Shown here piece by piece: positions 19,845 through 44,900 of a DNA stretch of 64,000 nucleotides. Position numbers and translations under genes: made by a program. The stretch's first letter is position 1, and each line of letters starts with the position of its first letter. The notes under the pieces were generated by a model. That model saw only the letters and a list, made by a program, of their open reading frames with translations, was not told where the DNA came from and made no database searches. Source of the DNA: Iphione sp. A-MEVVRFRX5 (lineage: Eukaryota); the NCBI GenBank assembly GCA_976226885.1, contig OZ320317.1, positions 2,170,001 through 2,234,000 on the forward strand. The letters run 5' to 3'.

Positions 19845-19982
19845 CTGAGGGACATAAAGGCAAAGCATCCATTTAGATCAAATATGCAGATAATAAGCAA
19901 TAAAATTTGGAAATAATTTCATTTGAAATTACATATCCTGCCAAATAGCCAAAGTGATTAGTGAATCATAAAATATTATTAC

Positions 19983-20067: not shown

Positions 20068-21225
20068 ATGGGGCAACTCATCCGTAAATCAATCGAGGCT
20101 GTCAAGGAGGAGATGTCATCAGAAATAAAGAAGCTCAGAGATGAAGTGGATCAACTGAAGAGGGCAAACGCAGCACTGAAAGTGGAGCTGAACGCAACGA
20201 TGACAGCTCAACAATCGAGTGTGCAGTCGGCTATATCGCACTTGAGCGCCAGGCTGTCCGATACTGACAAGACCTGTATCAAACTGGATGAGGAACTCTC
20301 CAGACAACGAATCTCCGAGCGAGGTACCAGAGTCATTATTGAAGGGTTGAAATCTGATGATTGTGCCGACCCGTCGGATGTGGCTATGAGAATGCTGTCA
20401 CAGCTGTTGGGCGGCGATGCTCTAGAGGTGACAGACATCGTCTGCTTACCAGTTGACGATGTGGGTCAGAAGGTCGTCGTTACATTTGGCGACATGGAGT
20501 CTAGGAATAAGGTGATGAAAGCGAAAGGTGGCCTAGTTAAGATGCAGGGATTCGAGTCTGTATATATCAAGGAGGACATTCCCCCGCGGGCACAAGAAAT
20601 TCAGCGGAAGCAAAGACTGGCAGCGGCTATCCGACGGCGAGGCAAGCGCGCGACTACGAGAGGGATCGACCTGTATGTGGAGGGGGTACGGTACGAGCCC
20701 TCTGATATTTCGTCGTTACCACAGGAAATCAACGTTGAAAACCTAACAACTCATACTGACGAGAAGGTTCTCTATTTTTCTAATGATACCCCATGTTTGT
20801 CTCCTTTTGACAAGAGTATTGTGCTTGAAGGTATGTCAGCCAGTGATTGTGTCGAAATAGCGTACAGAAAGTGTGAATCGCGCGCAATTGGGAACGAGGC
20901 AATCAGTCGCGAGGTAAACAAATCAAAAAGCGGTAGAGAAGCTCGGCATGCTTGTGGTGATTTGGTGCCGAATGAAGAATGGCGGGACGAATCAAAGGTA
21001 GTATTATCAAGAATACTTTATAGCAAAGCACACTTTGATCAATCTTTCAGATCAGCGTTGTTAAGAACTGGCGATCTTGATTTGGTGTATGCCGATACCG
21101 ACCCGGTTCTGGGATCAGGTAACTCTTTGCGTAAACACGAAGGCGGGAATGTAAAAATGAACGGGAATAATCTTCTTGGTGTTCAGTTGATGGAGGTCAG
21201 GCGTAATCTAAAGTTATGTACGTAG
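20068..21225 (+). CDS. LINE ORF1p: coiled coil + RRM-like domain + C-terminal NADAR/YbiA domain (385 aa, intact)
   Basis: N-terminal heptads, then RVIIEGL..VVVTF..VYIKEDIP (L1-type RRM/CTD pattern). The C-terminus has FRSALLRTGDLDLVYADTDPVLGSG and GNNLLGVQLMEVRRNL, matching NADAR motifs LL.TG..LVE..D..WG.G and G.N.LG..LM.VR. Confidence 0.85.
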   Translation: MGQLIRKSIEAVKEEMSSEIKKLRDEVDQLKRANAALKVELNATMTAQQSSVQSAISHLSARLSDTDKTCIKLDEELSRQRISERGTRVIIEGLKSDDCADPSDVAMRMLSQLLGGDALEVTDIVCLPVDDVGQKVVVTFGDMESRNKVMKAKGGLVKMQGFESVYIKEDIPPRAQEIQRKQRLAAAIRRRGKRATTRGIDLYVEGVRYEPSDISSLPQEINVENLTTHTDEKVLYFSNDTPCLSPFDKSIVLEGMSASDCVEIAYRKCESRAIGNEAISREVNKSKSGREARHACGDLVPNEEWRDESKVVLSRILYSKAHFDQSFRSALLRTGDLDLVYADTDPVLGSGNSLRKHEGGNVKMNGNNLLGVQLMEVRRNLKLCT

Positions 21226-21595
21226 ATCAGGGCGATTGTTATAGCCCGCATGTAATTTTGAGTCAAGCAAGTAGTTCATGTACGATTGTTAATCACTAAT
21301 GTAGGAGTGCAAGCCCAATTTGTCAATCTAGTTAATTCCACATATTACCGCCTATGCTTTGTGGGAGCAGGGCTTACTCGCTAACTCCATAATGTAACTA
21401 AAGGCTTCATATGTCTGTACAACACATTTCAACTGTCATTGATCTGAAATTAGCCTACTATTGCTTTGTCTAAAAGGTAACCTGTAGTGCATGATATTAT
21501 ATGCTATTGATTGCGGACATGGGGCACACAGGTTAACTCGCTTATTTATGCTCATATAATAGCTGCTACCGATTGACTGTCTCAATCACCTTTGA

Positions 21596-22294
21596 ACAGA
21601 GGCTGCAATCCGTAACTTCCCACCCTGGACTGAGCAAGACTGCACCCACGTCCTGCTAATATGTGACACCAGAACCGCGCTGTCGGCGGTGACGCTGCCA
21701 GTAGACAACATGCCGCCTGTGGCAGTCGACATCGTGAGAGTCCGTCATATTTCATATAAGAGACTTCTTATGCGGCGCATGCTGGTCGATACATCAACAT
21801 ACGGGATGGTAGTGGTATCAACCGGGCTTGGTGATGTATTAAAACGAGAAACCGAACAGTGGTCTCCTAGGTATCGTAGGCCGCGCGCCTATCAAGGCTA
21901 CATGGAGATGTGTGTGGATAAAATGACTCGTATGATCGCGGGTCCAGCAAATACGGGTCCGCTCTTGGTACTGGCAAACATTGCACCGATTGATTTAGGC
22001 GCTCTGAAACCAGACCTGGATGACATCACTGAGCAAATGTGTTTGAATGTATTGATTGACATCCACAACAGTGTATCAACATACACAGCTGAGAGGCATG
22101 GCACGGAGGCGCTGTGTCAGGAGTCACCATTTGATGTGCACAACAACGCAGACCTTCTGTCGGTGGCTGAGCTACTGAAATCAGATGGGATGCACGTGAC
22201 GGCGAGTGTGCGCGCAATATGGGGTGAACAGTACGCAGATCTTATACTTAACTACATAAGTGTTCATGGATCCGTTCCAAATGGTGCTATCTAA
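21596..22294 (+). CDS. SGNH/GDSL esterase-like ORF inside the LINE (start uncertain)
   Basis: The frame is open from 21596, upstream of the tracked GTG at 21689. It reads HVLLICDTR (block I-like), VVVSTGLGDV (block III-like), VLANIAP, and LKSDGMHVT..W (block V DGxH). First ATG is at 21710. Confidence 0.6.
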   Translation, partial: TEAAIRNFPPWTEQDCTHVLLICDTRTALSAVTLPVDNMPPVAVDIVRVRHISYKRLLMRRMLVDTSTYGMVVVSTGLGDVLKRETEQWSPRYRRPRAYQGYMEMCVDKMTRMIAGPANTGPLLVLANIAPIDLGALKPDLDDITEQMCLNVLIDIHNSVSTYTAERHGTEALCQESPFDVHNNADLLSVAELLKSDGMHVTASVRAIWGEQYADLILNYISVHGSVPNGAI

Positions 22295-22876
22295 AGACGT
22301 GCTGTCAAGACTCGTAATGTAGCTCTTTGAAAGAGTGTTAATGTATTGGATGTTTTCGTCTAGTTCATAAGCAAGATTGATGTTGTATTGGGTGATCTCG
22401 TGCACCCTGTTATCATGCGCTGACATACCAATAGTCGCAGGGATTTTTAAAGATCTTTGAATCTGTAGCTATTTACTGTAACTAAGCATCTATTGAATTT
22501 CTGTCTGACGTTACTGTCCATATTCTAGTAGAAGGAGCGCGCGTACGCGGGCATTGGTGTCTATGTTATGATCGATCCTCATGACTGTTGTTTGTCAATA
22601 GGTTGCTGACACGAACATGTATCACCATCTCTCTAAACGTAAGATGTATAACCCGGAGTAATGAGCGTATTACAGAATTTCAAATTAGAATGTAACTTCT
22701 GCAGAGATGGTTTCCAATCGTACGTGAGTGTTTATCATCAAAAGATCCATAGCTATGCTTTGACAAGGTAGTGCAAGGTAATACTTAGTGGGGAACACTA
22801 GCTGAAGGGAGTCCTAGAACCGAATATTACGAGTAGAGTCAATTTACACCGTCAGTAAATACTGTTTTAGCCAGTC

Positions 22877-25672
22877 ATGGGGGGAATTAAACTGGTTAGC
22901 TACAACATCAGGAGTATAGTGAAAAAGACAGATGATCTCTACTACAATCTGTGCTCTGACAAGGTGGACATAGTGTGTCTAACCGAGTCGTGGCTCACTA
23001 AGAGTCACAATGACGGTCTCATCAAGCTGCCTGGGTACACTACAGTCAGACAGGATAGGGGCGATAATGGGAAAAAGCGGGGAGGGGGTATTCTACTTTA
23101 TATAAGACAGGAAATAAAAGTGATAGAGACTAAGAACATCATGGAAATGGGGAACGCATGTTAAGGGCTATTTATCTCTCTAAAAGCAGGGATGAGGAAA
23201 CCCCTAAATTTGATTGTAATCTACCGCCCACCTTATGTCAGTCTACAAGATTGCTTAGCAACTATTAGGAAAGGTCTTAACTGCGTAACCAGGCTTTCCC
23301 GAAGGGATGTAGTTATCGTGGGTGACTTCAACTATAACTACACACAAAGTGGGGGATGTTCAGGGATGGGTATCAAGAGCTTATTAGGAAGTCTCGGATT
23401 TGTGCAGTTGATAAATCAGGCAACCATGGTAGACAACAATACGTGTCTGGACCATATATGGCTGAATCACCCGAGTAAGGGGCCATCTGGTGTGCTCAAC
23501 TGGCATCTGAGTGACCATCTGCCTACATTTGTGCAGCTAAAAAAAGGGACCTGTAAAGGTAAAACAGAATTTACCTGGGTACGTCCTTGGTCTAATATCG
23601 ACCTAGAGGACATCCTGACTGATCTGAATGTAGATGATCGTCACAAGCAGGGCCCCCCTGACTCAGCTTGGGACACATTTGTGGAAAAGCTGGAGGCAAC
23701 AATAAACGAGAGATGCCCATTAAAGAGAGTAGCGCGAAGAACTCGGTTTGGTGGATATCTCCCAGATTCGCAGACGAGGGAGCTATTCAAGAATTGGGAC
23801 TACTTCTTCGCCGTCTGGCGCGCTAGTCAGGATGAAGACAGCAGAAGGATTTATAAGTTCTATTGCAGGCTAATCAAACGGGTTGTGAAGCAATCGAAGC
23901 GTGACTGGTGGAACGGTCGCGTACGGGCTGCTGGAGAGGACCAGAAGAAATTATGGAAGGTAATCAATGATGCAATGGGTAGGAATCGGACAGGCCTGGT
24001 GATCCCCGACACGAATGTGGCAGGCTTTAGCACTGATGAGGAACTTGCAAATGGCTTCAATTCATTCTTCGTGAACGAGGTGTCGAGGCTTGCAAGGGAT
24101 CCGGTTGTTCACGAGCCTGGCATCCCTAGACATGAAGCCTTCGAGATAGAGCCACCGTCACCGACCACCTTGCGTCCGTTTGTGGCCAAACTGAAGACAG
24201 ACAAAGCATCAGGTGTTGGGTCAATACCGATGCGTGTCCTAAAACCCGTCCTACTTCAAAATCTCGACTTCCTCTCTCGGATCTATGGTTCCGTGATCGA
24301 CTCAGGTGTCTTCCCAGCCAACTGGAAAGTCGCGAGGGTTACACCGCTGCACAAAAGGGGTGACAAAAATGATCTTGGCAATTACCGACCGGTATCCATT
24401 ATACCGGTGGTAAGCAAGGTATTTGAATCATGGTACATTAAGATTCTAATGAAGGAAATGGAGAAAAGAGGCTTCATTTCTGAGAGGCAGCACGGGTTCA
24501 GGGCGGGCAGGTCAACCGAGACTGCGATATTCGAGATCTTCAAGTCTGTGGCTGAAGCGCACAACAAGGGACTATACACTTGCATTCTTGCATTTGATAT
24601 GCAGAAAGCTTTTGACCTGGCTCCTCATTCCATAATTTTGTGCTGTCTGGCTGAAGCCGGTATAGGTAGGGGAGTGAGGAAGCTCATGGAGAGCTATCTG
24701 TCAGACAGAATGCAATATGTGGCATGTAAGGATGCAAAGTCGGCGATGCTGCGTTTGGAACACGGAGTACCGCAGGGCTCAGTGGTCGGCCCAAGTGCCT
24801 TCAGCATCCTGATAGATAGCGTTGCGTCTTGTCTGCCAGATGGCTGCACAGCCACCTTATACACTGACGATATTAAGGTGTCTGTGGCAGCAAGAGACCT
24901 ATTGTGGCTTAGGGGCAGATCACAACGCTGTGTTGACGCAATTTCCAACTGGTGTGCAGATAATGGGCTCAGGTTGAGTGTAAAGAAATGCATGTATATG
25001 CCAATGAAGCGAGCCAAGGGGGTCGACCTGGACCTGTCGCTTGATGGAGATGTGCTAAGCAGAGTAAGATCGATGTCTCTGTTGGGATACTCCATCGATG
25101 ATGGCCTAACCTTCACATCTTGCCTGAAGCAAGTCAAACGCAAGATGTGGGCGGCCGCCGTGCAAGTGGGACGTGTGAAGAGTGTCATGCCGCTGGCAGT
25201 GCGCTGCAAATTAGCGAGATCGCTTGTACTACCTCACTTGGAGTATGCAGCATTGCTCTTCTTTGGGTGTTCCACCTCCTTGAAGATAAAGCTGCAGGTC
25301 CATCTCAACAACTGCATTCGTGTGTGTGTACAGTGCGGTCACTTTCTTTCAGCTAGGAAAATCAAGGACGATCTTGGGTTCGAACGCATGGAGGATATCA
25401 TAAATCAGCGGGGGCTAATAGCAGTACATAACCAACTAAGAGCCAGAGGACTGCAGATCTCTGGGAGGGGCAACACCAGAAGGAGCATGTCTCTCAATGG
25501 TAAATTGGTTAAGCCGAAATCAAGTTGGTTCGCAAGGAGTATCCTATATGAGAGGATCAGAAAGTGGAATTGTCTTCCAATTGCCATGAAGAATGCCCCT
25601 CTCTTGAACCGTGACAGGGTTCGTCAGCACCTAAGGGAAGCCGTGGATGGGGACAATGGAGACGTGCATTAA
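22877..25672 (+). pseudogene. LINE ORF2: APE endonuclease + reverse transcriptase, one nonsense codon
   Basis: Contains SYNIRS, LTESWL, DR..GGG, YRPP, GDFN, LSDH, QHGFR, FDMQKAFD, GVPQGSVVGP and YTDD. The tracked ORFs 22877-23164 and 23192-25672 share a frame and are separated only by TAA at 23162-23164. Confidence 0.95.
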
Positions 25673-28799: not shown

Positions 28800-31700
28800 T
28801 TTCAACTAATGTGTGCATCTAGAACAAGCGTTTGCTTTTGTTGTTGCAATCCCACTTCTACCTTGTCAGCCAATGAGAGTCCACCACCCAGAATTTATTG
28901 GTTTGACTATACACGTTTCCTCCGCCATGTTATAGGTGTGGCTCTGCCCAATAAACGATGTACTAAGCATCCACTGAGAATGAAAATATGAAGGTTGGGA
29001 CAGCTTTTTCATGCCTGTAACTTAGTCTCAGGTTTAAGAGACATCATTGGGACATTGAAAGGGTTTTTCACTGCCAACCATATTAGAACCTATGCTCCAC
29101 GTTGTCCTTGTGCTGGTCATGAATTAAGCCATCAGCTTAATGAAACCCACTAGGGTATCCTGCAGACTACATTCCAGCTTAATATTAGTGACATTACTTA
29201 CGATGCCTTCGAGTAACAGGTCCTTCTTCTCTAGAACAGAATGGTATGCATGAGGGTGGGTAGACATGGATAGGATGGACATGAGGTTGTTTTTTTTCAG
29301 TATTGGTGAAACCGACTGCATCTTCACTCAAAATGGTATTAGGTTACTGGTAGTTTCAACATTTATTACAAGTTTGGGGAAAATAAGTACCTGAGGATAG
29401 CTGAAAGACCTCCTGCCGACTCTCACTACTGCAGTTGTAATAGTACTTGTAATTTGTTTATTGTCATACGATCCTTCTACAAGAACAATGCTTTTCAGGA
29501 ATGACACATTATGCTTGTCAATTACACTTTTTTGGTTGTAAAAGGGATTTACTACTGTTCAATTATTTATGAACTTTATACATAAATACATGGGATTATC
29601 AGACACAATGTTATTGTTCTTACATGAGTACTTAACTCTTATCCCTTGTACTTTTCTTCAGTGAGGATATTCCAACTGATTTGTTGCATGCCGTTTTTGA
29701 AGATCTGCGACAATTTTTGTTAACCAATACCCCAAAAGGCAATATGTTACTGATGTGGTATGATGAGTTTGTTGAATAGCAATATTTCAATATTAAAGGG
29801 TAGGTACCTCTTTAATTTACTCAGGTTATATATCATGCCCGTAGCTAAGGGGGAATCAGGGGTATTGTCCGATATTCCCCAGAAAACTTCCTGGCTACAG
29901 GCTTGTATACACATAACATAATTCTACATTTTTGTTTGTCCAATACTTGACCTGTAAGACAGTACCTGATAAATAATGTACCCCAGATAAATAATGTACC
30001 TGATAAATAATGTACATGATAAATAATGTACTCAAGATAAATAATGTACCCCATTCATTATGTTTCATGTTCTGTGACTGTAGAGTTTTATTAAAAGTAA
30101 TAATCTTTCTTGTGCTGTCCTTGTTGTACAAGAGGACATATTTGATTTTGTCAAAATTTAGAATAAGGCCATTATTTCTGCACCATCTAACCATATGCAA
30201 CAGGCTTTTTGATCAAGTCCATCCCTATCATTCCCATGTACCACAAGGGTGATATCACATGCATGGTCGTAGGGGGTATGTCCGGTGGCATATCTTCTGG
30301 CAAACAGTTGATAACTATATGGGCAGCCAATGGCCCTATTGGGAAGCCTTGTGGTACCCCAATTGATCATATCCTACATGATGATTGTTCTCAACCCAGT
30401 CACACATACTGTTGTCTGTTTAAGAAGTAGCTTTGCATCAGGCTCAAATATATTCTTCATCCACCCGAATATTCTGCAGTGTTCTTAGGAATAAGTCACA
30501 ATTAAGTATATTGAAGGTTTTGCTCAGATCTAGGGCTAGTATGGCACCCTTTTTTCCTTGCTCAATGCCCTTATTCATATTCATTACTATTGAGGCTGTT
30601 GCTGTATTTGTAGAGAGTTTTGGAGTGAAACCATGCTGTGTATTGGACCAGCATTGAATAGACAATAATCCATGTAATTCAATAATTCATGTAATTTCTT
30701 ACAAAGAATTGTTTCAAATATTTTACATGGCATTGGCAGACAGTTCCCTGAATGATGTGTGCTCCCTGATTTGAATACTGGGCTTAGTTTTCTTATGTTC
30801 CATTCATCCACATACTCTCCCTACTTTATTATGCTATCAAATAGATTCCCAAATCATCTCATCTAATTAGGAAGGCATCAATAAGTATCCTACTGGTGTT
30901 GATATCTACGTTTGATGACTTTGAGCTATTCATACCGTTGATTACATTCAAAAGTCCTCAAAGTTGAAGTTGGTTACACTTGGGCTTGTAACACAGAGTG
31001 TACACCATACCAGTAGGTTCGATATCAGCCTTTATTTTTCTTCAGTAGTGGTACAGCAAGTCAGCACTCTTCAATATTAAGGCGGGTGAGTCCAACAAGA
31101 GAGTTAGAAAAACTCCCTTTTATAATCAATTCCCTTAAATGCTACTGCATAACATGTCACATGAGCCAGACATAGTTGTTAATTACATGTCAACTACACA
31201 ACAGGTACCTTAGGTCTTAGATGTCATGACATCACAGGTGTCAAGCATCCAGTGTCTCGTAAAGGCTCACTGATAACAATTACATGGTTCACAGCTAAAC
31301 TTGACATGAAATACAATCACTTTACACTGTTTTACAGGAACAGTTTCTGGCACAAAATGAACACGAGTACTTGAATGAAAAATTTATATGCGCACTTAGT
31401 AGTACTTTCCAACTGTTCACTATACAACACAGTACATTTGAGTGCATAATTCCTAATGATACATGTTCTCATTATCAGTACTGTGTTACAGGCTCCCTGT
31501 TTCCAAGCATCTTTCTGGTAATTGTTGATTTGGGATCGACACAGAGAGTTTGGCTACTCTGGCTATATAGGTCTCATTAAGTAATACTGCTGCTTCTCTG
31601 CCCATTACTGTAGCATTGTCCTTGGATAATTCTAAGTTATGATTAAATCGTTTGCTAACTAGTAATGTGTTAATATAGCTCTGCCATTTTTTTTACTGTT

Positions 31701-32400: not shown

Positions 32401-32759
32401 ATAGTTGCTATTCATTTAGCCACTGCCGCTTCCCTGACACCATCTTGCTGTCATTTAGCTCTGGATGACAGCAAATGATGCAGTCTAATACTCATGTTGC
32501 ATAGCACAGAGAGTTGCCCATAATGTATGCTGGCACAATTTCTTTTCATCAAACAAATCTACTAGGAATACTAGCCAGTCATCCAGGAGTTCGTGGATTG
32601 ACCAGGCTAATTCTGAGGTGTCAAGCAAGATTCAGTAATGAAGCTGCTTAGTTATGTGTTGATGGTGACCTAAAATTCAACAAGGCACTGAAATCTCTCA
32701 AGAAAAACTTGTAGAGTGCGATCTGTATAGGGAGAGTAAAGAAGTTCCTACTGCTAAAT

Positions 32760-33240
32760 GCCCGCCCGCACCTTTTTAAGGCATTAGTGATGTTGCACGT
32801 GCATTATCATGCGGTGACTCAGTTCAGTTTGGGGGCCTCCAAGCTGGTAGATTTGCAGGTACATGTGAATAGGTGCTTTCGTGTGGCTGTACAGGTTGGG
32901 TCTTTCATCTCGAGCAGAGTGATGGTGGATCGTCTTGGTGTTTGTAGAGTGGGTAACATCATCCAGGTGAGGGGTCTAAGAGCAATTCACCAGCAGGTAC
33001 ATCTTCGTCTAATGAAATTGGCCCCGGTGACTAATACCAGGCTGGGTAGGACCCTTCAATGTGCCCTTCCCAAGGCAAATTTGTGTAGATTTGCAAGATC
33101 TCTTCGCTTCAAGGGTAGAGGTGCTTGGAATTGGTTGCCTGCTGCTGTGCGTGAAAATCCTGTCTTCCCCAAGGCAGCGGTGGCGGACAAATTATTGTCT
33201 CGGGCATCTCACTGAATGTAATCAAAGGTCTGCTCTGACT
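32760..33240 (+). mobile_element. 5'-truncated LINE ORF2 C-terminus related to the LINE at 20011-26648
   Basis: LQVHVNRCFRVAVQVGSFISSR..FARSL..WNWLP aligns by eye with LQVHLNNCIRVCVQCGHFLSAR..FARSI..WNCLP of that LINE. Confidence 0.8.
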
Positions 33241-34900: not shown

Positions 34901-36870
34901 CCCGCATTACTTGACCTTTGATGGTGGCAGTGCCCCCCCCCCCCCCCGGTATATCACCATGCTAGTGATACTCTGTGGTAGTGAAGAATCTCTGGATTTA
35001 CCATTTAAAATTTGTTTGAAGCAGCTCTTGCATCCTCACTAGATGTTTTCTTCTGATAGCATGTCTTGACATGTTTCATAATCTGGTAATATCTTAGTAC
35101 ATTGTTCAAACAGATAAATTTGAGAGGTCACTTTTGGATATCATTCATAATTTGTTGATATCTCGATAGTTTCTTTCATCAGATAAAACAATGCCGACTG
35201 TGCAATTTCCTTGGAGCATGTCTAAACATGTTTAATACCAATTTCATAACTCTGGGAGATCATTTCAGTAAATGACAATATCTTTCTGAAACAAAACATT
35301 CTTAAACAGATGAAAAAGTCAGATGTTATTCCTTTTCTTAGGTTATGAGAGTAGATAAACAGACAGATCCATGGTACTAACTCATCATTTTGAAAATGTA
35401 TATTGACATAAAAAGTAGACATCATTAGCACAAAAGAAACAGCTTTAGGCACAGATCTCTATTGAGATGTCGCGAGATTTCTTGAGAATCTGTAGAGCTA
35501 AACCAGATGGGAAAGTCAGACAGATCCTGATCCGTGTTTGTTTGTTCCATTCTGTGAAGAAGCACTGGAAATGGATTCGACATGGAAAATCTTTCAAATT
35601 AGATGCCAAATTCTAACATTTGATTGTTCCAAGGCAAGCACTCTCTTGAAAATAATATATATGTTTCACATGACTGACCTAACCTGTCTGACCTGGTTGT
35701 AAATACAATCATAAAGTGCCTACCTGGGAACTGCCACCCGACACTCTACGCGGAAAACCTGTCAATCGTTGCAGTTGCTACAGATTTATTAGGGCTAAGG
35801 ACATTGTGTCTCCGTATAGCTGAATCTGTGGCAAACTGGTGTGCGAGGGAAGGCTTTGTCTTAAGCTAAAAGAAGTGTACATACCTGCCACTGCCTAAAG
35901 CTGCAGGTTTAGACTCAGACATCACACTAGGAAAATGTAAGATGGATATGTTGAAACAGTGCACACTACTGGGATATAAACCGGATGGTTCGCTTGGTCC
36001 AATGGAGACCATTAGGCATCTCAAATGCATCATGTGGACAGGTGCTCTGAAGACTATCACCTGGTGATGCTATAGAGTTATCTCAGGTAAAAAGGGTGAA
36101 GTTTCAAACTCATATCCACAAATGTGCTACAGTAGCACTACAATGTGGTGGACACCTGAGTGCTAGATACCTACAGGACCGTCTAAAGGTACCAAGGGTA
36201 GGTAAACTAATCAATTAAAGGGGATTGCAGTGCATCCATAAACTGATGTAACTAGGGATCTTGCAATCAGAGAGAAAGGAACAGGCTCCCACTAGGCAAG
36301 AAACTGGGTAGTAAACTCGTGTTCGGGGAACACGATGACCAATGACAACTAATTGACTGTAGACCTAAACATGACATGGCATTTGCTCCTCATGGCTAAG
36401 CATCATAGAATATGGATCTCCTTGTCTAATCATCTATTCATGCAGTCTGATCGTTAACCCCATAATCCAGACTAATTGTGAACCAAGTATATCTGAAGGG
36501 TCTAGTCGCTTTTTTGGTTGTAATGATGTGTTCAATGAAGTAAAGTTGTATTTAAACCTCTGAATTAGATAATGAACAACACAAGGTTACATTAGATGGT
36601 CCAATTGAACATTACTTGTATAAGGATAAGGCGTTCAGTTCAGAGACTATTGTTCATCCATTGAAAACTCTGCATATTGTATGAGACTGATGAATAAAAT
36701 CTCTTGAAATCTCTTGAAATCTTGAAATGAACTGATGACAAAGGAAGAACGGATCAAGTAAGAAAAGAAAATTCATTTTCTTTCCATTAGTTTTATTTTT
36801 ACTTATGTAATGTGTATTACTTTTGTTCAGATAGGTTTTTTTTAAATCATGTCATTTTCACAAGGCTAAC

Positions 36871-39800
36871 AAAGTTCAAAGTTCAAAGTTCAAAGTAAGT
36901 TTAATTTTTTCTCAGTGTACATCATATGAGAAATACATAGAGCTCTTCCAGGCAAACTAACAGGCAAAGAAGTGTTTTTTTTTTTTGGTACGGCAGATGG
37001 TTCTTTTTACAGGACTGAGACCTTTGTGAACAACTTAAGTAAGCATAACTAAATCTTCTGGTTGTGACAGTTGATCAATATATTTAGATGTCAGGTTAGT
37101 GTGGACCCCTACTAGTAGAACTTCACTCATCGGATCAACATTTGTCTAAGTAGCCTTTAAAACTTTTCATAGATATTGTGGCCTTAGAGGGGATAGTTAG
37201 TTCATTCCACAACTTTTGAACTTGGTTCCAGAATGATTTGGCATATGCAGATCTCTTAGGCAACTTTAGTTCGAGACTACCCACGAGACTTCTTTGGGAC
37301 ACCCTAGTTTTCACAGACATTTCACACTCTTTCAGTAAGTGTACTCTGTGTATCAAACAGACTAGCTGATTCAGTCCTCTGTCCATCACTGTCAAGATCC
37401 CAGTCATTTTCCTCAAAGCTACAGATGATACCTGAGACTGTTGTACCAAACAAAACTAGTTTACAAGCCCTGTTCATTTCAATTTGCAGGTTGTCCATTA
37501 TACCCTTACTGGATGTTGCTACAAATGGTAGTCCGTAGTCAATGGCTGGGAGAACAAAGGCTTTGAGTAATTTCACTCTGTCCTTGAAGGGGAGAATCCA
37601 AACAACCTTACATAGAGAGTAGGATCTCCTTCTTAGGTTCATAATCATTTCTTTTATTATTTGATGCCAGTTCAGTTTGTTGTCAATAGTATACCCTAGG
37701 AATTTGAATGCATCTACCGCTTCAAGTTTAGTATCACCCATCATCAAGTCTAGGGCAAACTCCCGTGCCTTACCAAATGACATGTAGACAGTTTATTGTG
37801 CATTCAAGGTTAGACCATTCATTTTCATCCAGTGCATCGCGTCTTTTATACCTTGATGTAATTTTAACCTGAGAGACGATGCATTACTTGCACTGCAATA
37901 TATTGTCAGATTGTCTGCATAGAGGATCGATTTAGTGATGCATAAAGATTCTGGAAGCGCATTAATAATCAAGGAGAACAGCAGAGGGCCCATAAGGCTC
38001 CCCTGCGGTACCCCTTGATTCACTGGTAGCTGACTGGAGCTGTACCCATTACACCTTACATATTGTTGTCTGTTACTTAGATACTCCTCTGCCCATCTGA
38101 TCATTCGTGAACCTGTACCTGCTTTTTTGAGGCAATTCACGATCAACTGATGGTCTATTACATCAAAAGCTTTCGATAGGTCAAAACACACGGTCCCCTC
38201 GTCAACTGCTGTGTATACATGACGTAGGAGTACTGCTTTTGCTGTGGATGTTCCCCTTTGCTTGTGGAAGCCTTGCTGCTCATGACAAAAGTATCCACTA
38301 TCCTCCAGGTACAAAGACAATTGTCTTTGGATCAGCTTCTCAATCAACTTCCCAATCTACGGCAGTATTGCTACTGGCCTTTAGTTACTCTTACAGTTTC
38401 TTGATCCCTTCTTGAACAAAGGCGTGATTCTTGCGACTTTCCACTGCTCTGGGAAGCATCCAGATACAATCATTGAATTTACTATTCCTAGGACTGTTTC
38501 CAAACCTATTAATAAGGCATCTTTCAGGACCTCTGAGGGTTTATTGGGCATACCACTAGGCTTGTTCGTTTTCAGACCCTTGATAGTTTCTACCAGCTCA
38601 CCATGAGTTACCCAGCACAGGTCCCATTTGGGATCCCAATTGATATGTTCAAGTACAGCTTTGTTGGATAATAGCTCGGCTTGTTGGATAAATGACTCAT
38701 TTTGACAATTTGGTACTTCGCTTAGAGGAATTTTCATGCAATACTACACTCGTTTCATGGTTATTTTTACACATAGTATGCCTGTTAATACATTGCCAGT
38801 AGTCCTTAAAGTAATGGCAATTAGATAGCATCTTAGACATGTACACATTTTTTGCTCTTACAACGAGCACATTGACCCTTTTCTTGTAAAATTTTGAGAT
38901 ATGGAGGCAGTCTATATTACCTGTTTTTGAGAATTCAGAGATAAAGAAATCCCGATAAGCCTTGGCTCCCAGTATCTTTGCATTCATCCACCCTTTTCCA
39001 TTGTAACGCTTTTTCCTTTTTAGTGGGCAAAGTTTCTCAACAGCATGTTCTATACATGATTGCAAGCGTTCCCACTTAGTTTCCGCTGAGACCGACAAAT
39101 CAGTGTTCAAGGACTTTAAGGTTGGAGCAATTTCATTGTCTAAGGCTACTCTGGAGTATTTGGACCGTGGCCTACCCATATACTCACTTGTTAGCTAAGC
39201 AAGGAGTGGTGCCCGAGCCTGACCACTGTTAGCTTGAAAGGAGCTGACGTTATTTCATGTGCCACATCAAGTAAATAGTCAGGCTTGGCATAATCGCTTT
39301 TTTGGTTGACCCAGAAGAATTTTTCGATGTAATACTCAACCATATGATCTCCGAGTTCAGTTCCAGTGTGATCAGTAATATACCGGATGATGGGATTCAT
39401 TCCTGAAAAAGAATAGTGTCCTGTCAGGTTTATACCTATATTTTTCCCTTCTTGACTGTATTGCCCTTTTACTATAGATTTTTTCACGTACTTGTATTAG
39501 CGATAGGCCAACTAGATTTTACCCATTATGTTCCTTACCCGCAGTACACAAATTCCGCAGATTGTGCCCTGTACCAAGTTCACAGTCGTAGGACGCCTCT
39601 GCTAAGTAGAGATTGTCTGAGCGCAGTAAGTATTCAACCAAGTTTGGATTCTGATCAAACTTACTGCGAGTGATGTCTGTCAAAACATTGAGATTTCTTT
39701 CTCCCCAATCAGCCAATGTAATCAGACATGCTTCGATGCCCCTGATTACTCTGGGATCAGTTTCATTCAAAATTGGTTGAGCTGCTTCTAGGTTCCCAAC

Positions 39801-40600
39801 ACTTATAGCCTTCGGGTGTTGGAAGGCTTGCTCTGCTGAGGTATATGTTGTGTCATTGTATTCAATTGGACACCGATAGAGGTTTGCAGAAGGCACGTGA
39901 ATGCCCCTAAAAGCCAGAGTGTTGTCCGAGTGGTAAGATTTAGCTTCTCCTAGGCAAAATGATTTAGGCAAATCCTCCGATTTGTCGTATTGGTACTCAA
40001 TGCCATCGATTGTTAGACTAATACCAGTTACGTAATCCTGGTGTCCAAGCTCGCATGCGTGTCGAACTATCGTTTGCAGGTCCCGGTTCAATGACTGAAG
40101 ATGCTTTGGAATATCCTCGTTCAGATAGATATTCCTATAGTCCTTTTCTCTTCTCAGCTTGAACCTTCCTTTGTACGCTGTATGCTCTTCTGTACGCTCT
40201 TCTGTTGCTCAGAACCATTATCGGTGACATCCTCCCATTTGTTTAGCACAGTCTGGATACTTTCCGTTTGGGATTCCAGCCTGTCTATTTTGCTGTTTAG
40301 CACTTCAGTTGTTTTGATTAGTTTACCTATTTCCTTGTTTTGTTGATCCCTGTCTTTGTTCTCAAAAGATGACGATAACGTGGATGATAACGAGTTGTTT
40401 GGCTTGTGACCATGTCCCTGTGCGGAGTTTGAGCGAGTCACCGGGGTTGATCTGTCTTGTATTCCTGCTTGCTCTGTTGGTTGATCCTTCACCTTTGGTT
40501 TCTTCAGTTTTGTTTGATTCGTCATTGTTTTATAGACTTATTCTGTATTTTGTTTTTTTTTGTCAAAAAAACTAGTGGAAACTAGTGGAAAGTAGTGGAA
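36871..40600 (-). mobile_element. Second LINE (CR1/L2-like), decayed, with internal deletions
   Basis: ORF1 pieces at 40525-39480 and ORF2 fragments at 39179-37135 (QQGF, FDLSKAFD, GVPQGSLMGP, LYADN). A (TTTGAAC)3 tail lies at 36871-36895 and a 10-bp tandem repeat at 40571-40600. Confidence 0.85.
39480..40525 (-). pseudogene. ORF1p of second LINE with NADAR domain
   Basis: Coiled coil (40154-40525), then after a deletion/frameshift YRNIYLNEDIP. It continues NLY..IEYND.TYTSAEQAFQH.KA, KFDQNPNLVEYLL, LAEASYDCELGTG and G*NLVGLSLIQVREKI. A single TAA at 39521-39519 interrupts the last NADAR helix. Confidence 0.85.
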
Positions 40601-40609
40601 AGCCTAAGA

Positions 40610-43600
40610 ATGCACATTGTACAGCTACGGAGAAATGCTTTAAAAATTCTGAGCATAGAAGCATCAATGATTTCCAAAATGAAATTCCCATTCGAGGAGA
40701 AGAATAGTTCATAACCACTGACACTTAATTCCGATGTAAATGACACTCTCGCCAACCTATGGCACATTGCAGGAACACAAGATACCACTGGCAATGACAC
40801 GGTTATTTTAAACACTGGCCCGACTGCCATGTCTACTCCAATGAAGCAGACACGAACCAGGCCTGAGGCGAACATACAACATACAACATACAACCATCCA
40901 GTGCGGCAACACATCACAATGTAGAAGACCGGGGCGAGCATTGGACAGGTGAAAAAAACAATGTTCACAATACCACTAACACAAGAAATACTTGCTTTTT
41001 TCAGAACGAATCGTGGTTGGAAGGCCTCACAGAGGCCACAATGGAGACCTGGCAATCTGCAATGAGCCACACTGCGGCATACGTATGCAACAGCGTCCGG
41101 GTTGCATACGTATGCAACAGCGTCCGGGTACGTAAAAGATGAAACATTTAGAACAAGATTATACGAAATGAAAAAAGCCCACGGTGAGGCGGTGTTAAAT
41201 GAAATCATTTCATACTTGTCTCAGACCGTATCTGCCGCAAAACGCACAGCGGCAAGTGATTTGGCAATAGTGGAATGGCACATTGAGTCCTCCACTGAGT
41301 TAAAAATGAGTTGCAAATATGCAGAATCAATGAGAGAACGGATTAAAAAGGAGACACTCGAGGACCTTAAAAGACGAATAGACCGGATCATACAGAGAGA
41401 AACCACGCAGTCCGACTTGCTCAATGGTGGGAAGAGGAGACCATCCAACACAGGTAATAACAGACAGAATTTTCAGACAGGCGGCAGGGGACAGGCAGAG
41501 GTACAAACGGAGGATGAGGGAGTCACGGATCATTGTCCCACCCCTACAGCTGCCCGAGCATCGCAAGGGACTCAACCTCTGCTTTCTCCAGCCAGGAGAT
41601 GACCGCCTTATGCAACCTGATAGTAAAAAAGTGAGTAACAAACATACACCTCCAGTAAGCATGCTCCCCACAAAGCAAAAAACAGCAAAGAAAGCATTCA
41701 TAAGTAACCCAATTACCAAAACCTGTGACATGGACATAAATACAAGTTCCCTAACATTCATGCATAATGTGAACAAAAATCCCCATCAAAACACTTGTAT
41801 CCTTGAAACTAACGTCAATGGCACCAGAACCAAAAAACACTGAAAAACACAAACTCCTCTGGTCCAACACAATATACGTTATCATACAATTACTGACAAT
41901 ATCACTACTGTTGCAGGTATCAACCCCTCAGCCACTGCAGACAGAGAGCGACCAACCCCTGGTTTGAGGCAGACATGTAATAGTCACATCGAGGGAACAA
42001 CTTGCAGTAAGTGGTTCTCCGAATCCTGGTTGAGCAAGTTGTCCAAGAGGAGGCACAAGATGAGCAATCAAAAATGAAATAAAGACTCTAAGAAAGAAAA
42101 TCGTGTCATTAACCACCCTGTATGCACCTCTCTTACTGATCCCAGCATAAATAAATGCAAAGACGGTAAAGAGATGTTAGGTTTCATTATCTCGATCATA
42201 GAGCATATGAAATTGAAACCAACATATGAATTTATTAGAGAGATCTGGACACACTATAATGAACAAGTTAAGAAAAAGATCGTAGTAAACCTGAGTCATA
42301 TACTAAGGACCTTAGGTACATACTGAAGCAAATTAACACAGAACAAATCACGAAAGGGGGACCTAATGGTCCGATCTTATTGGAAACCATGATCAATGTC
42401 AATGAGAACGACTTCACAAACATTAACCTGAAAGAATGACACAAAAGAACATTACTAGACAAACACAAAAATGCATTAAAAACACTTACCAAAAGACCAG
42501 ACATAGTCATTAAGAAAGCAGACAAGGGTGGGGCAGTGGTGGCGTGGGACACCACTTCATACAGAGAAGAAGGATACAGACAACTCAGTGACAGGAGGTT
42601 CTACAGACAGTTAAATGAGAACCCGACTCAGAAATATAATCATGAAATCCAAAACCTGATTGACGAATTGGGAAACATGAACAAACTTCCACCAAGCATC
42701 ATTAGGGAACTAGTGAATCCATGCCCCCGGACATCACAGTTGTACCTCCTGCCTAAAATCCACAAAGGGGTAAAACCGGTCCAAGGTAGACCTGTTATAT
42801 CATCAAACGGTTGCCCGACAGAAAAGATTTCTGCATTAGTAGATTATTATCTCAATCCTTTGGTACAAAACACTAAATCGTATGTCAAAGACACCCCAGA
42901 CCTATTACACAAGCTAAGAAACACAGACCTTGACATGAATGACTTACTAATCACACTAGATGTGACAAGCCTCTACACTGTGATACCCAACAATGAAGGA
43001 ATAGCAGTGGTCTCAAACTTTTTGGCTAAGCATAGGAACACTCACGAGAAACCGACAAATGACACTCTCATAAAATTATTAACGAAGGTCTTAACAATGA
43101 ACAACTTCAAGTTTGAGCTACTTACAGGTAGGTGGCACTGCCATGGGCACAAGGGTACCCCGACTTATACGAACATATTTATGAGTGAATTCAAAGAAAA
43201 ACATATATACAATTATAAAAAGCTACCAAAACTATGGTTAAGATTCATAGATGATATCCTGTTTATATGGAACCACCGCACAGTCGAGTTGACAAATTTC
43301 ATTAATTATCTCCAAGGATGTACTGAGAACATCAAATTCACCATAGAGAACAGCCAGGTGAGCATAAACTTCCTGGATGTGCAAATTAACAAGAAAAATA
43401 CATGCATAGACACAACGGTCTTCACAAAACCCACTGACAGAAACACTTACTTATTTTATAACTCAGCGCATCCTATACACATGAAGTGGGGAACCCATAT
43501 GGACAACTCCTCAGATTAAGGAGAATCTGCAACAACGACTATGACTTTAAGTGTAAGATGGTGAAGAAATTGGTAGACTTTAAAATGAGAAGTTACCCCA

Positions 43601-44900
43601 CGAACATCCTCTTGGAGGCAGCAACTAGGGCATTAAACTTAAATAGAAAAGAAACGCTTAAGCCCCACAGTGCAGGGCAAGAAAATAATAGGTGCCACAT
43701 CCTATGTACTACATTTCACCCAGGCAACACACAGGCAAGAACAATAGTGAAAGGAAATTGGGACTACCTGAAAAAATCAAAGAGCAGGTTTCTCACTAAA
43801 ATGAGACTTGTAATGGCGTACCGCAGACCAAGAAACTCAAAAGACATCTTGGTCAGGGTGAAACTACCAAGCGCAAATACAGGACAAATCCATCTGCTGA
43901 AACACCACCAGATAACAGAAAGAAATGCAAAGCACATAAGTGCAGATATTGTCCAGGTTTAAGCAAAACGGATAAAATCACGAGCCGCACCACAGAGTAC
44001 ACGTATATTGCCAAACATAATGTAACATGCAACAGCTCGAACCTGATATACTGCCTAACCTGCAAAAAATGTGGTATGCAATATGTGAGACAAACAAAGA
44101 ACGAGATCAAGGAAAGGTTTAAAAGACACTTCTATAATATTAAAAAAGACCCCGAGAAAACAGAAGTCTCCAGCCACTTCAGAGAAACAGGCCACAAGGG
44201 GTTAGACGATGTTTCAATCACAGTTGTTGACTTCATCCATAGCTATCCGGAAGGGGAAAAAGCTAAGTACCTGACACAGAAGATCGAATTTAACTGGATA
44301 CACCATATGCGCACTATGTTCCCACTGGGCCTTAACACCATTGATTATGAATAACCACTATCCCCGAATGTAACTACTCCCTTAGCCTCGTCAAAAAATT
44401 TTTTCTGTCTTAGAAGAGTACCTACATTTGGTGTAATGTAGCCTGATCAGATGGATTTCGAAACCAGGATAACCCTCTGTGACACCAGTAGTATTTTGTG
44501 TTGGTATATATGCTCCTATTAACAACCAATAGGAAGGGCAGGAAGCTTCACTGCTGACCCCTGGTATCCTAGTAACACTGGACATCCAAAACATACACTG
44601 ATTTAAATACCACTGCTGTAAGGTAGGCTTCACAGAACCTGGTCGCTTTAGGAAGGAGAAGGACTAGCCGCGTTTCGCTTATTCTGTATTTTGTATCACT
44701 TCTCTGTTTGATTATCTCCAAGTTTTTAGCCAATATATGGCAAATTAGCCGGAGCGTTACTCCTGCATGTCCACTCTCCACTGGTCCCTTCGCAGTTTCA
44801 ACAAGAGTTAATCTCTTCTCAGGCATAATTGCTTTAAATTGTTGGATGATATTTGTTCGGCAGAATTTGAGTATTCAGAGAGAAACATTAAGGACGTCAC
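40610..44900 (+). mobile_element. Penelope-like element (RT + GIY-YIG), frameshifted; ends approximate
   Basis: Contains IVIKKADKGGAVV, YLLPKIHK, GRPVIS, LDVTSLYT, LRFIDDI and FLDV. The GIY-YIG region reads NLIYCLTCKKCGMQYVRQT..RFKRH and ends PLGLN at about 44330. An N-terminal domain lies at about 41040-41600. Confidence 0.9.
41077..41128 (+). repeat. 27-bp in-frame tandem duplication in the PLE N-terminal region
   Basis: gcatacgtatgcaacagcgtccggg occurs at 41077 and 41104. Each copy starts with the 12-bp palindrome gcatacgtatgc. Confidence 0.9.

What the first reader, a model, noticed from the sequence alone, without database searches (positions are those of the whole stretch)
39480..40150. 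Second, highly diverged LINE also has ORF1-NADAR
Seen: the same order of elements as in the first LINE (IYLNEDIP, GISLTIDGIEY vs GIDLYVEGVRY, then NADAR). The NADAR signature is more canonical here: TYTSAEQAFQH.KA, SKFDQNP.L..LL, LAEAS.D and G.NL.G..L..VRE. The two proteins share motifs but little overall identity. Inference: the fusion is old and was retained in separate lineages, which argues for selection rather than a one-off gene capture.
Basis: partly seen in the sequence, partly recalled or inferred. Interest (0 to 1): 0.85.

Follow-up and report, generated by a model that had tools for sequence, protein, structure and literature searches.

The report
Decayed LINE with NADAR-tailed ORF1
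A broken copy of a jumping gene (a LINE) still shows that its RNA-packaging protein ended in a NADAR enzyme domain, a fusion that is old, widespread and kept by selection in related elements, though it has been noted once in print and its function is untested.

Summary
On the minus strand, about 40570-36870, lies a decayed 3.7-kb LINE. Its ORF1 reads coiled coil, L1-type C-terminal domain (IYLNEDIP, GISLTIDGIEY), then NADAR. NADAR passes Pfam (E 6e-13) and its model matches PDB 8BAU (TM 0.81).

This copy is dead. It has a frameshift after the coiled coil, no RRM core, a TAA inside the last NADAR motif, most of the endonuclease deleted, and three stops in the RT.

Its NADAR is more canonical than that of the intact LINE at 20068-25672. 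It keeps 18 of 20 family-conserved positions against 13, and all three residues equivalent to tested catalytic residues.

The fusion looks old and of single origin:
- 128 of the 150 best database relatives carry the same CTD-NADAR junction, with fixed spacing (12 and 19 residues).
- All ten fetched loci with an intact APE-RT ORF2 carry it directly after ORF1-NADAR.

Selection is shown in one related family only: NADAR dN/dS about 0.05, 14 synonymous against 3 non-synonymous changes.

The proposed co-divergence test was inconclusive, with one ORF1/ORF2 conflict.

A 2025 paper briefly notes NADAR in ORF1 of oyster Tx1 LINEs. This scan has flagged the fusion 103 times on other DNA of this genome. 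This is a new member of a known kind.

The parts
40569..40601 (-). 10-bp tandem repeat (3.3 copies) just upstream of the ORF1 start. The 5' limit of the element was not determined.
   Evidence: sequence
40154..40525 (-). ORF1 N-terminal piece (123 aa): low-complexity head, then coiled coil. It ends at a TGA because of a frameshift relative to the rest of ORF1.
   Evidence: It aligns to positions 22-106 of the ORF1-NADAR family profile. Pfam gives only weak coiled-coil-type hits.
40137..40184 (-). Last helix of the RRM (…KLRREKDYRN) in the NADAR frame. The frameshift and a deletion of about 78 profile positions (the RRM core) lie just upstream, at about 40160-40185.
   Evidence: the frame-0 piece starts at profile position 185, and positions 107-184 are unmatched in any frame
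39930..40136 (-). L1-type ORF1p C-terminal domain (IYLNEDIP … GISLTIDGIEY … DLP) and the linker to NADAR
   Evidence: The family profile hits human L1 ORF1p 2YKP at E 1e-14 over the same profile region.
39468..39929 (-). NADAR domain. It carries the E (SAEQ), K (HPKA) and E (LAEAS) that align with residues tested by mutagenesis in solved NADARs.
   Evidence: Pfam E 6.3e-13; fold match to 8BAU and 2B3W; residue table
39519..39521 (-). In-frame TAA stop inside the C-terminal G-x-N-L-x-G motif of NADAR
39191..39487 (-). Remnant of the C-terminal third of the AP endonuclease (…GHHSLLS in place of the SDH motif). The N-terminal two thirds, the ORF1-ORF2 spacer and any middle ORF are deleted.
   Evidence: and tblastn. 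There is no Pfam hit, so this is read by eye against the first LINE and is an inference.
38730..39179 (-). Linker between endonuclease and RT
   Evidence: tblastn to residues 138-274 of the first LINE's ORF2
37322..38737 (-). Reverse transcriptase, in one frame with three in-frame stops
   Evidence: Pfam RVT_1 E 1.1e-22; 31.6% identity to the first LINE's RT over 433 aa; translation
37135..37321 (-). ORF2 C-terminal tail in a shifted frame, with the W-N-x-L-(T/P) motif shared with the other ORF2s
36870..36896 (-). 3' tail: (AACTTTG) x 3.9
20068..21225 (+). Comparator: intact ORF1 (385 aa) of the first LINE, with coiled coil, RRM, CTD and a degenerate NADAR
   Evidence: Pfam NADAR E 4.4e-14; profile positions 48-421; lost residues
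22877..25672 (+). Comparator: APE and RT of the first LINE

Best explanation
Shown: window 40570-36870 (minus strand) is a dead, internally deleted copy of a non-LTR retrotransposon. Its ORF1 protein was an L1-type RNA-binding chaperone (coiled coil, RRM, C-terminal domain) with a NADAR domain joined to its C-terminus.

Shown: the same architecture, with a length-invariant junction, is present in the intact LINE at 20068-25672. It is also present in well over a hundred diverged protein clusters from other genomes, where it sits directly upstream of an APE-RT ORF2. The fusion therefore arose once, long ago, and was inherited by many LINE families. The two window elements are deeply diverged members (RT 31% identical) of one RT sub-lineage.

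Shown in one related family: NADAR is under purifying selection at least as strong as that on ORF2. Across families the residues equivalent to the tested catalytic residues are nearly invariant.

Inferred: in active elements the ORF1p trimer coats the LINE RNA and so holds several NADAR active sites next to the RNA, the nicked target DNA and the new cDNA. There NADAR acts as an N-glycosidic ADP-ribosyl hydrolase and removes ADP-ribose from nucleobases, as characterised NADARs do on guanine and cytidine. This would undo a host ADP-ribosyltransferase mark that otherwise blocks reverse transcription or integration.

At this locus nothing is expressed as a working protein. The copy is a fossil that records a canonical NADAR in its lineage.
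For: Anatomy. NADAR identity: Pfam; family profile against PDB 8BAU E 9e-35 and YbiA 2B3W E 9e-28; AF2 model pLDDT 90.3 with Foldseek TMq 0.81 to 8BAU. L1-type ORF1p: the same profile hits human and mouse L1 ORF1p, 2YKP E 1e-14 and 2LDY E 4e-8. Breadth: 1638 cluster representatives at E<=1e-3, and 128 of the top 150 have CTD+NADAR. LINE context. Junction spacing. Catalytic equivalents among 139 ORF1-type proteins are E 99%, K/R 86% and E 98%; this copy has E, K, E, mapped through the 8BAU alignment and the mutagenesis in PMC11543638. Selection, L010 against L014: ORF1 dN/dS 0.17, CTD+NADAR 0.058, NADAR core 0.05, ORF2 about 0.12. RT relationship of the two window LINEs. NADAR chemistry on nucleic acids: PMC11543638, PMC11125620, PMC12945103.
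Against: No other copy of this element's own family could be obtained, so selection in this lineage is inferred from relatives. No enzymology exists for any LINE NADAR, and substrate and purpose are inference. This copy has Ala at a Ser that is 99% conserved and Leu at a Trp/Phe/Tyr position. These may be post-insertion decay or lineage changes. The intact first LINE lacks two of the three key residues (K to E, E to Y), so some lineages keep the domain without its canonical active site. NADAR and RT trees do not demonstrably co-diverge. There was no cellular NADAR outgroup, so monophyly of LINE NADARs is not proven. Against tandem-NADAR and CCHC-type proteins the tree needs 4 changes, of which well-supported branches force at least 2.
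Confidence: 0.8

Rival explanations
1. The ORF1-NADAR module spreads between LINE lineages by recombination (ORF1 swapping). If so, its presence in two diverged LINEs reflects module exchange rather than strictly vertical co-divergence with the RT.
For: NADAR groups L006 with L009 (95/98; 44% identity against about 28% for other pairs), while ORF2 data reject that pairing (p-AU 0.006). NADAR data reject the ORF2 topology (p-AU 0.005) and stop rejecting it once L006 is dropped.
Against: For the two window LINEs, NADAR data do not reject the RT-supported pairing (dlnL 0.8, p 0.35). The L006+L009 group was named after the tree was seen, and long branches are involved. Exchange would still imply one origin of the fusion and its retention.
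Confidence: 0.3
2. In LINE ORF1p the NADAR fold is kept as a non-catalytic module, for example for binding ADP-ribose or NAD-derived ligands or nucleic acid, and not as a hydrolase.
For: The intact first LINE has lost the equivalents of K50 and of the superfamily glutamate, yet keeps an open frame and the fold-defining Gly, Trp and Lys positions. Earlier notes of this scan report other copies without the key residue (unchecked).
Against: Across 139 ORF1-type proteins the residues equivalent to the catalytic ones are 86-99% conserved. That is hard to explain without catalysis. This copy keeps all three.
Confidence: 0.15
3. The two window LINEs acquired NADAR independently from host or microbial NADAR genes (convergent captures).
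For: Only 23-25% NADAR identity between them. The NADAR tree does not resolve them as sisters.
Against: The junction geometry is identical (12 and 19 residues, conserved LP) and the CTD is homologous on the N-terminal side. Their RTs are sisters. The AU test allows NADAR sisterhood.
Confidence: 0.04
4. NADAR is a neutral passenger that hitch-hikes on successful LINEs.
For: This copy and many others are decayed. Function is untested.
Against: dN/dS of 0.05-0.06 in NADAR between independent insertions of one family, lower than in the ORF1 N-terminus (0.33) and about that of ORF2 (0.12). The domain is still recognisable where RTs are only 22-31% identical.
Confidence: 0.04
5. The juxtaposition is a chance meeting of a host NADAR gene fragment with a LINE fragment at this locus.
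For: The element is heavily rearranged: two internal deletions and a frameshift.
Against: CTD and NADAR are in one uninterrupted frame and align end to end with the family profile. Coiled coil, CTD-NADAR, APE remnant, RT and tail are collinear on one strand.
Confidence: 0.01

Closest known systems
ORF1 proteins of Tx1 LINE families of Crassostrea gigas in Repbase, noted to contain YbiA-family NADAR domains (Genome Biol 2025, PMC12477816)
   Same: A NADAR domain within a LINE ORF1 protein of an invertebrate. The role in retrotransposition is unknown, and RNA-intermediate processing is suggested.
   Different: The paper gives one paragraph and a supplementary alignment, with no junction, selection or distribution analysis. 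Whether the window elements are Tx1 was not settled here. Their ORF2 has no CCHC motif, ends in a WNxLP-type motif, and scores best in PDB against an R2 protein, not L1 ORF2p. This copy has a microsatellite tail, not poly(A).
L1-type (type II) ORF1p: coiled coil, RRM and CTD, e.g. human L1 ORF1p, PDB 2YKP
   Same: The family profile matches 2YKP over coiled coil, RRM and CTD at E 1e-14. The D/E-L/I-P … R … motif of the CTD is present here.
   Different: L1 ORF1p ends after the CTD. Here a 150-aa enzyme domain follows. In this copy the RRM core is deleted.
Characterised NADAR hydrolases: Phytophthora nicotianae NADAR (8BAU), DarT1-associated NADAR antitoxins, E. coli YbiA (2B3W)
   Same: Same fold (TMq 0.81 and 0.69). 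The Glu, Lys and Glu equivalents are conserved. As in 8BAU the acid is the superfamily glutamate (L-x-E-A-S/T), not the DarT1-type aspartate.
   Different: Those are free-standing or operon-encoded proteins. This one is the C-terminal domain of a retrotransposon RNA chaperone. Sequence identity is about 20%, and no activity data exist.
Esterase-bearing ORF1 proteins of CR1/L2-type LINEs (type IV ORF1p; from my own knowledge of Khazina and Weichenrieder 2009 and Kapitonov's CR1 work, not checked here)
   Same: A precedent for a hydrolase domain carried by a LINE ORF1. Several NADAR-LINE relatives also have a separate SGNH-like middle ORF.
   Different: A different enzyme fold and chemistry. No middle ORF or remnant of one is present in this copy.
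Ectocarpus Gypsy LTR retrotransposons with an N-terminal NADAR in Pol (PMC12477816)
   Same: A retroelement-borne NADAR.
   Different: A different element class and fusion partner, and probably a separate acquisition. The authors report mostly bacterial best hits.

Membership tests
NADAR (Pfam PF08719, YbiA-like) | Sequence match above the curated Pfam threshold | tested here: met
   49.7 bits against a cut-off of 35.1, E 6.3e-13
NADAR (Pfam PF08719, YbiA-like) | NADAR fold | tested here: met
   AF2 pLDDT 90.3. Foldseek gives 8BAU prob 1.00, TMq 0.81 and 2B3W TMq 0.69. The next hit has E>1.
NADAR (Pfam PF08719, YbiA-like) | Residues equivalent to those needed for guanine-ADPr hydrolysis (P. 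nicotianae E43 and K50; the superfamily glutamate, E. coli C7 E173) | tested here: met
   This copy has E, K, E and the first LINE has E, E, Y. The mapping uses the HMMER alignment to 8BAU and PMC11543638. A 2-residue tag offset in the chain numbering is assumed.
NADAR (Pfam PF08719, YbiA-like) | ADP-ribosyl or N-glycoside hydrolase activity | not testable with these tools
   Needs enzymology. In addition, this copy carries a premature stop.
L1-type (type II) ORF1p | N-terminal coiled coil | tested here: met
   The 123-aa piece aligns to coiled-coil profile positions 22-106. Pfam gives only weak coiled-coil-family hits.
L1-type (type II) ORF1p | RRM domain | tested here: not met
   Profile positions about 107-184 are absent in all frames of this copy, and only the last helix remains. 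The RRM is present in the first LINE and in relatives, so this is a deletion in this copy and not a family trait.
L1-type (type II) ORF1p | C-terminal domain homologous to the L1 ORF1p CTD | tested here: met
   The family profile hits 2YKP and 2LDY across RRM and CTD. This copy aligns from profile position 185 onward.
Non-LTR retrotransposon (LINE) | Reverse transcriptase of the LINE type downstream of ORF1 on the same strand | tested here: met
   RVT_1 E 1.1e-22. PDB hits are to R2 and L1 ORF2p.
Non-LTR retrotransposon (LINE) | AP-endonuclease domain | tested here: inconclusive
   No Pfam hit. Only a C-terminal remnant was recognised by eye, and the rest is deleted.
Non-LTR retrotransposon (LINE) | 3' tail and target-site duplication | tested here: inconclusive
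   An (AACTTTG)n tail was found. The 5' end and TSD were not defined.
Tx1 clade of LINEs (the clade named in PMC12477816) | RT grouping with Tx1/L1 references; ORF2 C-terminal CCHC motif | tested here: inconclusive
   No reference RT set was available. No CCHC motif occurs in any of the ten ORF2s. The ORF2 of the first window LINE and the RT piece of this copy score R2 at or above L1 in PDB, whereas the external family L006 scores L1 ORF2p best and ends in AATAAA plus poly(A).
Three-ORF NADAR LINEs with an SGNH-like middle ORF (earlier notes of this scan) | A 200-240 aa ORF between ORF1 and ORF2 | tested here: not met
   tblastn finds no remnant. The interval is deleted in this copy, so its ancestral state is unknown.

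The most novel reading that the evidence does not exclude
LINE-encoded NADAR is an anti-defence enzyme. Invertebrate hosts would mark LINE RNA, cDNA or nicked target DNA by base ADP-ribosylation, using PARP-type or pierisin/CARP-type transferases. The ORF1p-tethered NADAR would erase that mark. This would make nucleic-acid ADP-ribosylation a previously unrecognised arm of transposon control in animals. It would also explain many of the 'animal NADARs' whose role is called unclear in PMC11125620.
Probability: 0.25. Interest if true: 0.85.

Novelty: new member of a known kind. Interest (0 to 1): 0.42.

Why it matters
This locus is a fossil and matters little on its own. Its value is as one more diverged data point. 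The point is that an ADP-ribosyl-nucleobase hydrolase domain has been an inherited, selected part of the ORF1 protein of a large group of invertebrate LINEs.

NADAR enzymology on DNA and RNA has only been worked out since 2023. Those authors list animal NADARs as being of unknown role and do not mention transposons.

Linking the two gives a concrete, testable idea: reversible base ADP-ribosylation takes part in the retrotransposon-host conflict. It also warns that many 'animal NADAR genes' in databases are LINE ORF1s.

Tried and rejected
- Word-indexed search with the first LINE's ORF1 found nothing.
- A single-sequence PDB search with this NADAR found nothing. The profile search was needed.
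- A NADAR-only profile search for free-standing cellular NADARs, wanted as outgroups, gave only 11 unnamed fragments.
No outgroup-rooted NADAR tree could therefore be built.
- The look-up of sequencing runs listed no run. Read laying was not used, so neither expression nor copy variation of this family could be examined.
- The ESM Atlas look-up returned only generic NADAR clusters.
- The search of earlier findings by sequence was blank.
- The tree of ORF1 N-termini was too saturated to be useful.
- Co-divergence, Mantel test: r 0.51, p 0.02, but this depends entirely on the fast-evolving first LINE. Without it r is 0.18, p 0.23.
- Co-divergence, AU tests: NADAR data have too little signal, and some random trees survive.
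- Window DNA shares no similarity with any fetched locus, so the external elements come from other species. The host organism of the window was not identified.
- The RT clade (Tx1 or other) could not be assigned without reference RTs.
Full report
**What is at the coordinates.**

The stretch 39480-40150 lies inside a decayed LINE on the minus strand. Reading 5' to 3' on that strand:
- A 10-bp tandem repeat at 40601-40569.
- An ATG at 40525 that opens a 123-aa low-complexity and coiled-coil ORF, ending at 40154.
- In the next frame, an uninterrupted reading from about 40184 to 39522.
- A TAA at 39519-39521, which falls between G and NLVGLSLIQVRE.

Downstream follow:
- about 100 aa that look like the C-terminal third of an AP endonuclease (39487-39191; no Pfam hit, read by eye);
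- the APE-RT linker (39179-38730);
- an RT in one frame with three in-frame stops (38737-37322; RVT_1 E 1.1e-22);
- a frame-shifted C-terminal tail (to 37135);
- a 3' (AACTTTG)x3.9 microsatellite at 36896-36870.

**Is the NADAR real?**

Yes, on three lines of evidence:
- Pfam PF08719 scores 49.7 bits against a cut-off of 35.1 (E 6.3e-13).
- An exhaustive HMMER search found 1638 cluster representatives at E<=1e-3 and 204 at E<=1e-10. A profile of 90 of them (A1) aligns this copy at 231 bits over profile positions 185-423.
- An AlphaFold2 model of residues encoded by 39953-39522 (pLDDT 90.3) matches only two PDB folds significantly: P. nicotianae NADAR 8BAU (TMq 0.81) and E. coli YbiA 2B3W (TMq 0.69).

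**What is it fused to?**

The same A1 profile hits the two solved NADARs (E 9e-35 and 9e-28). Over its N-terminal 230 positions it also hits human and mouse LINE-1 ORF1p (2YKP E 1.2e-14, 2LDY E 4e-8). The family is therefore an L1-type ORF1p (coiled coil, RRM, CTD) with NADAR added at the C-terminus.

In this copy the coiled-coil piece covers profile positions 22-106 and the CTD-NADAR piece covers 185-423. The RRM core in between is missing and the two pieces are out of frame. Measured against the intact LINE in the window, about 1-2 kb between the end of ORF1 and the middle of the endonuclease is also gone. The copy is dead.

**Comparison with the first LINE (20068-25672).**

Its ORF1 (385 aa, intact) has the same order of parts and a Pfam-significant NADAR (E 4.4e-14). 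Identities between the two elements are 24-25% for ORF1 C-terminus and NADAR, and 31.6% for RT.

Of 20 alignment columns conserved at 85% or more in 139 ORF1-type NADARs, this copy keeps 18 (Ser76 to Ala, Thr165 to Ser). The first LINE keeps 13.

I mapped the mutagenesis results of Schuller et al. 2023 (PMC11543638) through the 8BAU alignment. The ribose-binding Glu, the phosphate-binding Lys and the superfamily catalytic Glu are E 99%, K/R 86% and E 98% conserved in the LINE set. They read E, K, E here and E, E, Y in the first LINE. So 'more canonical here' is correct. The intact neighbour is the one with a doubtful active site.

**Is the fusion old and of single origin?**

- Of the 150 best hits to this NADAR, 128 also carry the CTD. 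Many match the first LINE's coiled-coil/RRM/CTD part as well.
- Thirteen loci were fetched for nine such proteins, all from two ENA assemblies. Ten of them have ORF1-NADAR followed at 0.4-1.5 kb by an intact APE-RT ORF2. In L015 the ORF2 is split into two called genes, and in L005 it is degraded. Three of the ten also have a 200-240 aa middle ORF.
- One other look-up (P0009) gave a Logan contig with two tandem ORF1-NADAR genes and no ORF2.
- The window shares no DNA similarity with any of these loci, so several species are involved.
- The junction is the strongest argument. The distance from the CTD Gly to the conserved Pro of 'LP' is 12 residues in 123 of 132 proteins. From that Pro to the first NADAR Phe it is 19 residues in 103 of 132. 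Both window elements read 12 and 19. Independent captures would not reproduce this.

I used ten paired elements: the two window LINEs and eight external families.
- The ORF2 tree puts the two window LINEs together (100/99). They stay together, with one extra sequence, among 130 RTs that include the 120 nearest database RTs (support 98).
- The NADAR tree is mostly unresolved. It does not reject the window pair (dlnL 0.8, p-AU 0.35).
- NADAR strongly joins L006 with L009 (95/98), which ORF2 rejects (p-AU 0.006).
- NADAR data reject the full ORF2 topology (p-AU 0.005). They no longer do so when L006 is removed, although some random trees then survive as well.
- A Mantel correlation of 0.51 (p 0.02) disappears without the fast-evolving first LINE (r 0.18, p 0.23).

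Verdict: compatible with vertical descent for the window pair, underpowered overall, and with one supported hint of ORF1/ORF2 reassortment.

**Selection.**

No second copy of this family was available: no sequencing run was listed and no other copy lies in the window. I therefore tested a related family with three full-length copies (L010, L014, L015; ORF2 split in two in L015).
- L010 and L014 are independent insertions, 96.8% identical. ORF1 dN/dS is 0.17 and the N-terminal half 0.33.
- CTD+NADAR dN/dS is 0.058, with 14 synonymous against 3 non-synonymous changes (binomial p 2.6e-7). The NADAR core is 0.05 and ORF2 about 0.12.
- L010 and L015 share flanking DNA, so they are one insertion that was later duplicated. 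As expected, they show few and more evenly spread changes.

NADAR is thus as constrained as the RT while the family is active.

**How it most likely works.**

Shown: the architecture, its age, its constraint and the conservation of the catalytic equivalents.

Inferred: ORF1p trimers coat the LINE RNA in cis, so NADAR is delivered at high local concentration to the RNA, the nicked target and the nascent cDNA. Known NADARs hydrolyse the N-glycosidic bond between ADP-ribose and guanine or cytidine in nucleic acids (PMC11543638, PMC11125620, PMC12945103). The most economical reading is that NADAR erases base ADP-ribosylation that would stall reverse transcription or integration. Whether that mark is a host defence is speculation. 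The first LINE's degenerate site suggests that some lineages have moved to a non-catalytic role or are losing the function.

**Comparison with the literature and with this scan.**

The only paper found that links NADAR to LINE ORF1 is the 2025 Ectocarpus TE survey. It remarks that ORF1 proteins of several C. gigas Tx1 families in Repbase contain YbiA-family NADAR domains (PMC12477816). The NADAR enzymology papers list animal NADARs as unexplained and do not mention transposons. This scan already holds 103 notes on the same fusion elsewhere in this genome. Several follow-ups there reached similar conclusions. I re-derived mine independently and cite those notes only as leads.

This item is therefore a further, decayed member of a barely described but already noted kind.

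**Clade.**

Not settled.
- None of the ten ORF2s has a C-terminal CCHC motif, and all end in a WNxL(P/T)-type motif.
- Two external families end in AATAAA plus poly(A), and L006's ORF2 scores best against L1 ORF2p.
- The window elements score an R2 protein at or above L1. This copy has a microsatellite tail.
- The nearest database RTs to the first LINE are only 27-37% identical. The three that carry an organism name come from a tapeworm, a beetle and amphioxus.

Noticed in passing
window 20068-21225: The intact first LINE's NADAR has lost the Lys (now Glu) and the superfamily catalytic Glu (now Tyr), and also Asn77, Gln98 and Gln154, yet the 385-aa ORF is open. This may be a non-catalytic or decaying NADAR in an otherwise intact element.
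   Followed up: partly
L006 and L009 (ENA ERZ26222911): The ORF1 C-termini and NADARs of these two families are 44% identical and group at 95/98, but their ORF2s do not (31% identical, AU p 0.006). This hints at ORF1 module exchange between LINE lineages in one genome.
   Followed up: partly
L003 9371-10060, L004 9385-9996, L012 9459-10178, L005 4921-5559: The middle ORFs between ORF1-NADAR and ORF2 are homologous to each other (BLASTP E 1e-12 to 1e-18). They carry SGNH-like blocks (xDSRG, GG-x-N/C, DG-x-H) but have no Pfam hit. The first window LINE's extra ORF (21689-22294) shows no BLAST similarity to them.
   Followed up: partly
protein P0121 and its 11-member cluster: A different architecture: an N-terminal region with two CCHC-type knuckles directly followed by a NADAR that is among the closest (35-37% identical) to this copy's, with no L1-type CTD. 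It may be a second kind of retroelement Gag/ORF1 carrying NADAR. Its genomic context was not fetched.
   Followed up: no
proteins P0001-P0006, P0003 (4240 aa), P0065: Proteins with 2-7 tandem NADAR domains and no ORF1 parts were the top-scoring hits. They could be host genes, domesticated LINE NADARs or gene-model chimeras. On the NADAR tree they form two or three clusters among the LINE types.
   Followed up: partly
L001/L002 (Logan ERR14368249, ERR14368245): Two ORF1-NADAR genes (550 and 542 aa) lie in tandem on one 6.4-kb contig, with only small ORFs between them and no ORF2.
   Followed up: no
L010 against L015 (ENA ERZ25767047): Similarity of 99.1% runs well beyond the LINE: 7.7 kb against a 5.3-kb element. 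One insertion was copied by a segmental duplication.
   Followed up: partly
window 42536-44354 (+): Three consecutive ORFs (327, 158 and 92 aa) with an RT-like F-I-D-D motif and a GIY-YIG-like end look like a Penelope-like element by eye. Pfam found nothing.
   Followed up: no
window 19297-19872 (-): A piggyBac-type transposase fragment (DDE_Tnp_1_7, E 1e-28) abuts the 5' side of the first LINE.
   Followed up: no
window 12367-13101 (+), 30129-30647 (-), 32658-33182 (+), 35678-36242 (+): Four further LINE RT fragments, 27-42% identical to the first LINE's RT. None has a NADAR nearby by tblastn.
   Followed up: no
window 41077-41146: A 27-bp tandem duplication (2-2.4 copies) lies inside an unexplained 208-aa minus-strand ORF (41208-40582), just upstream of this LINE's ORF1. 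It could be 5' UTR or unrelated DNA.
   Followed up: no
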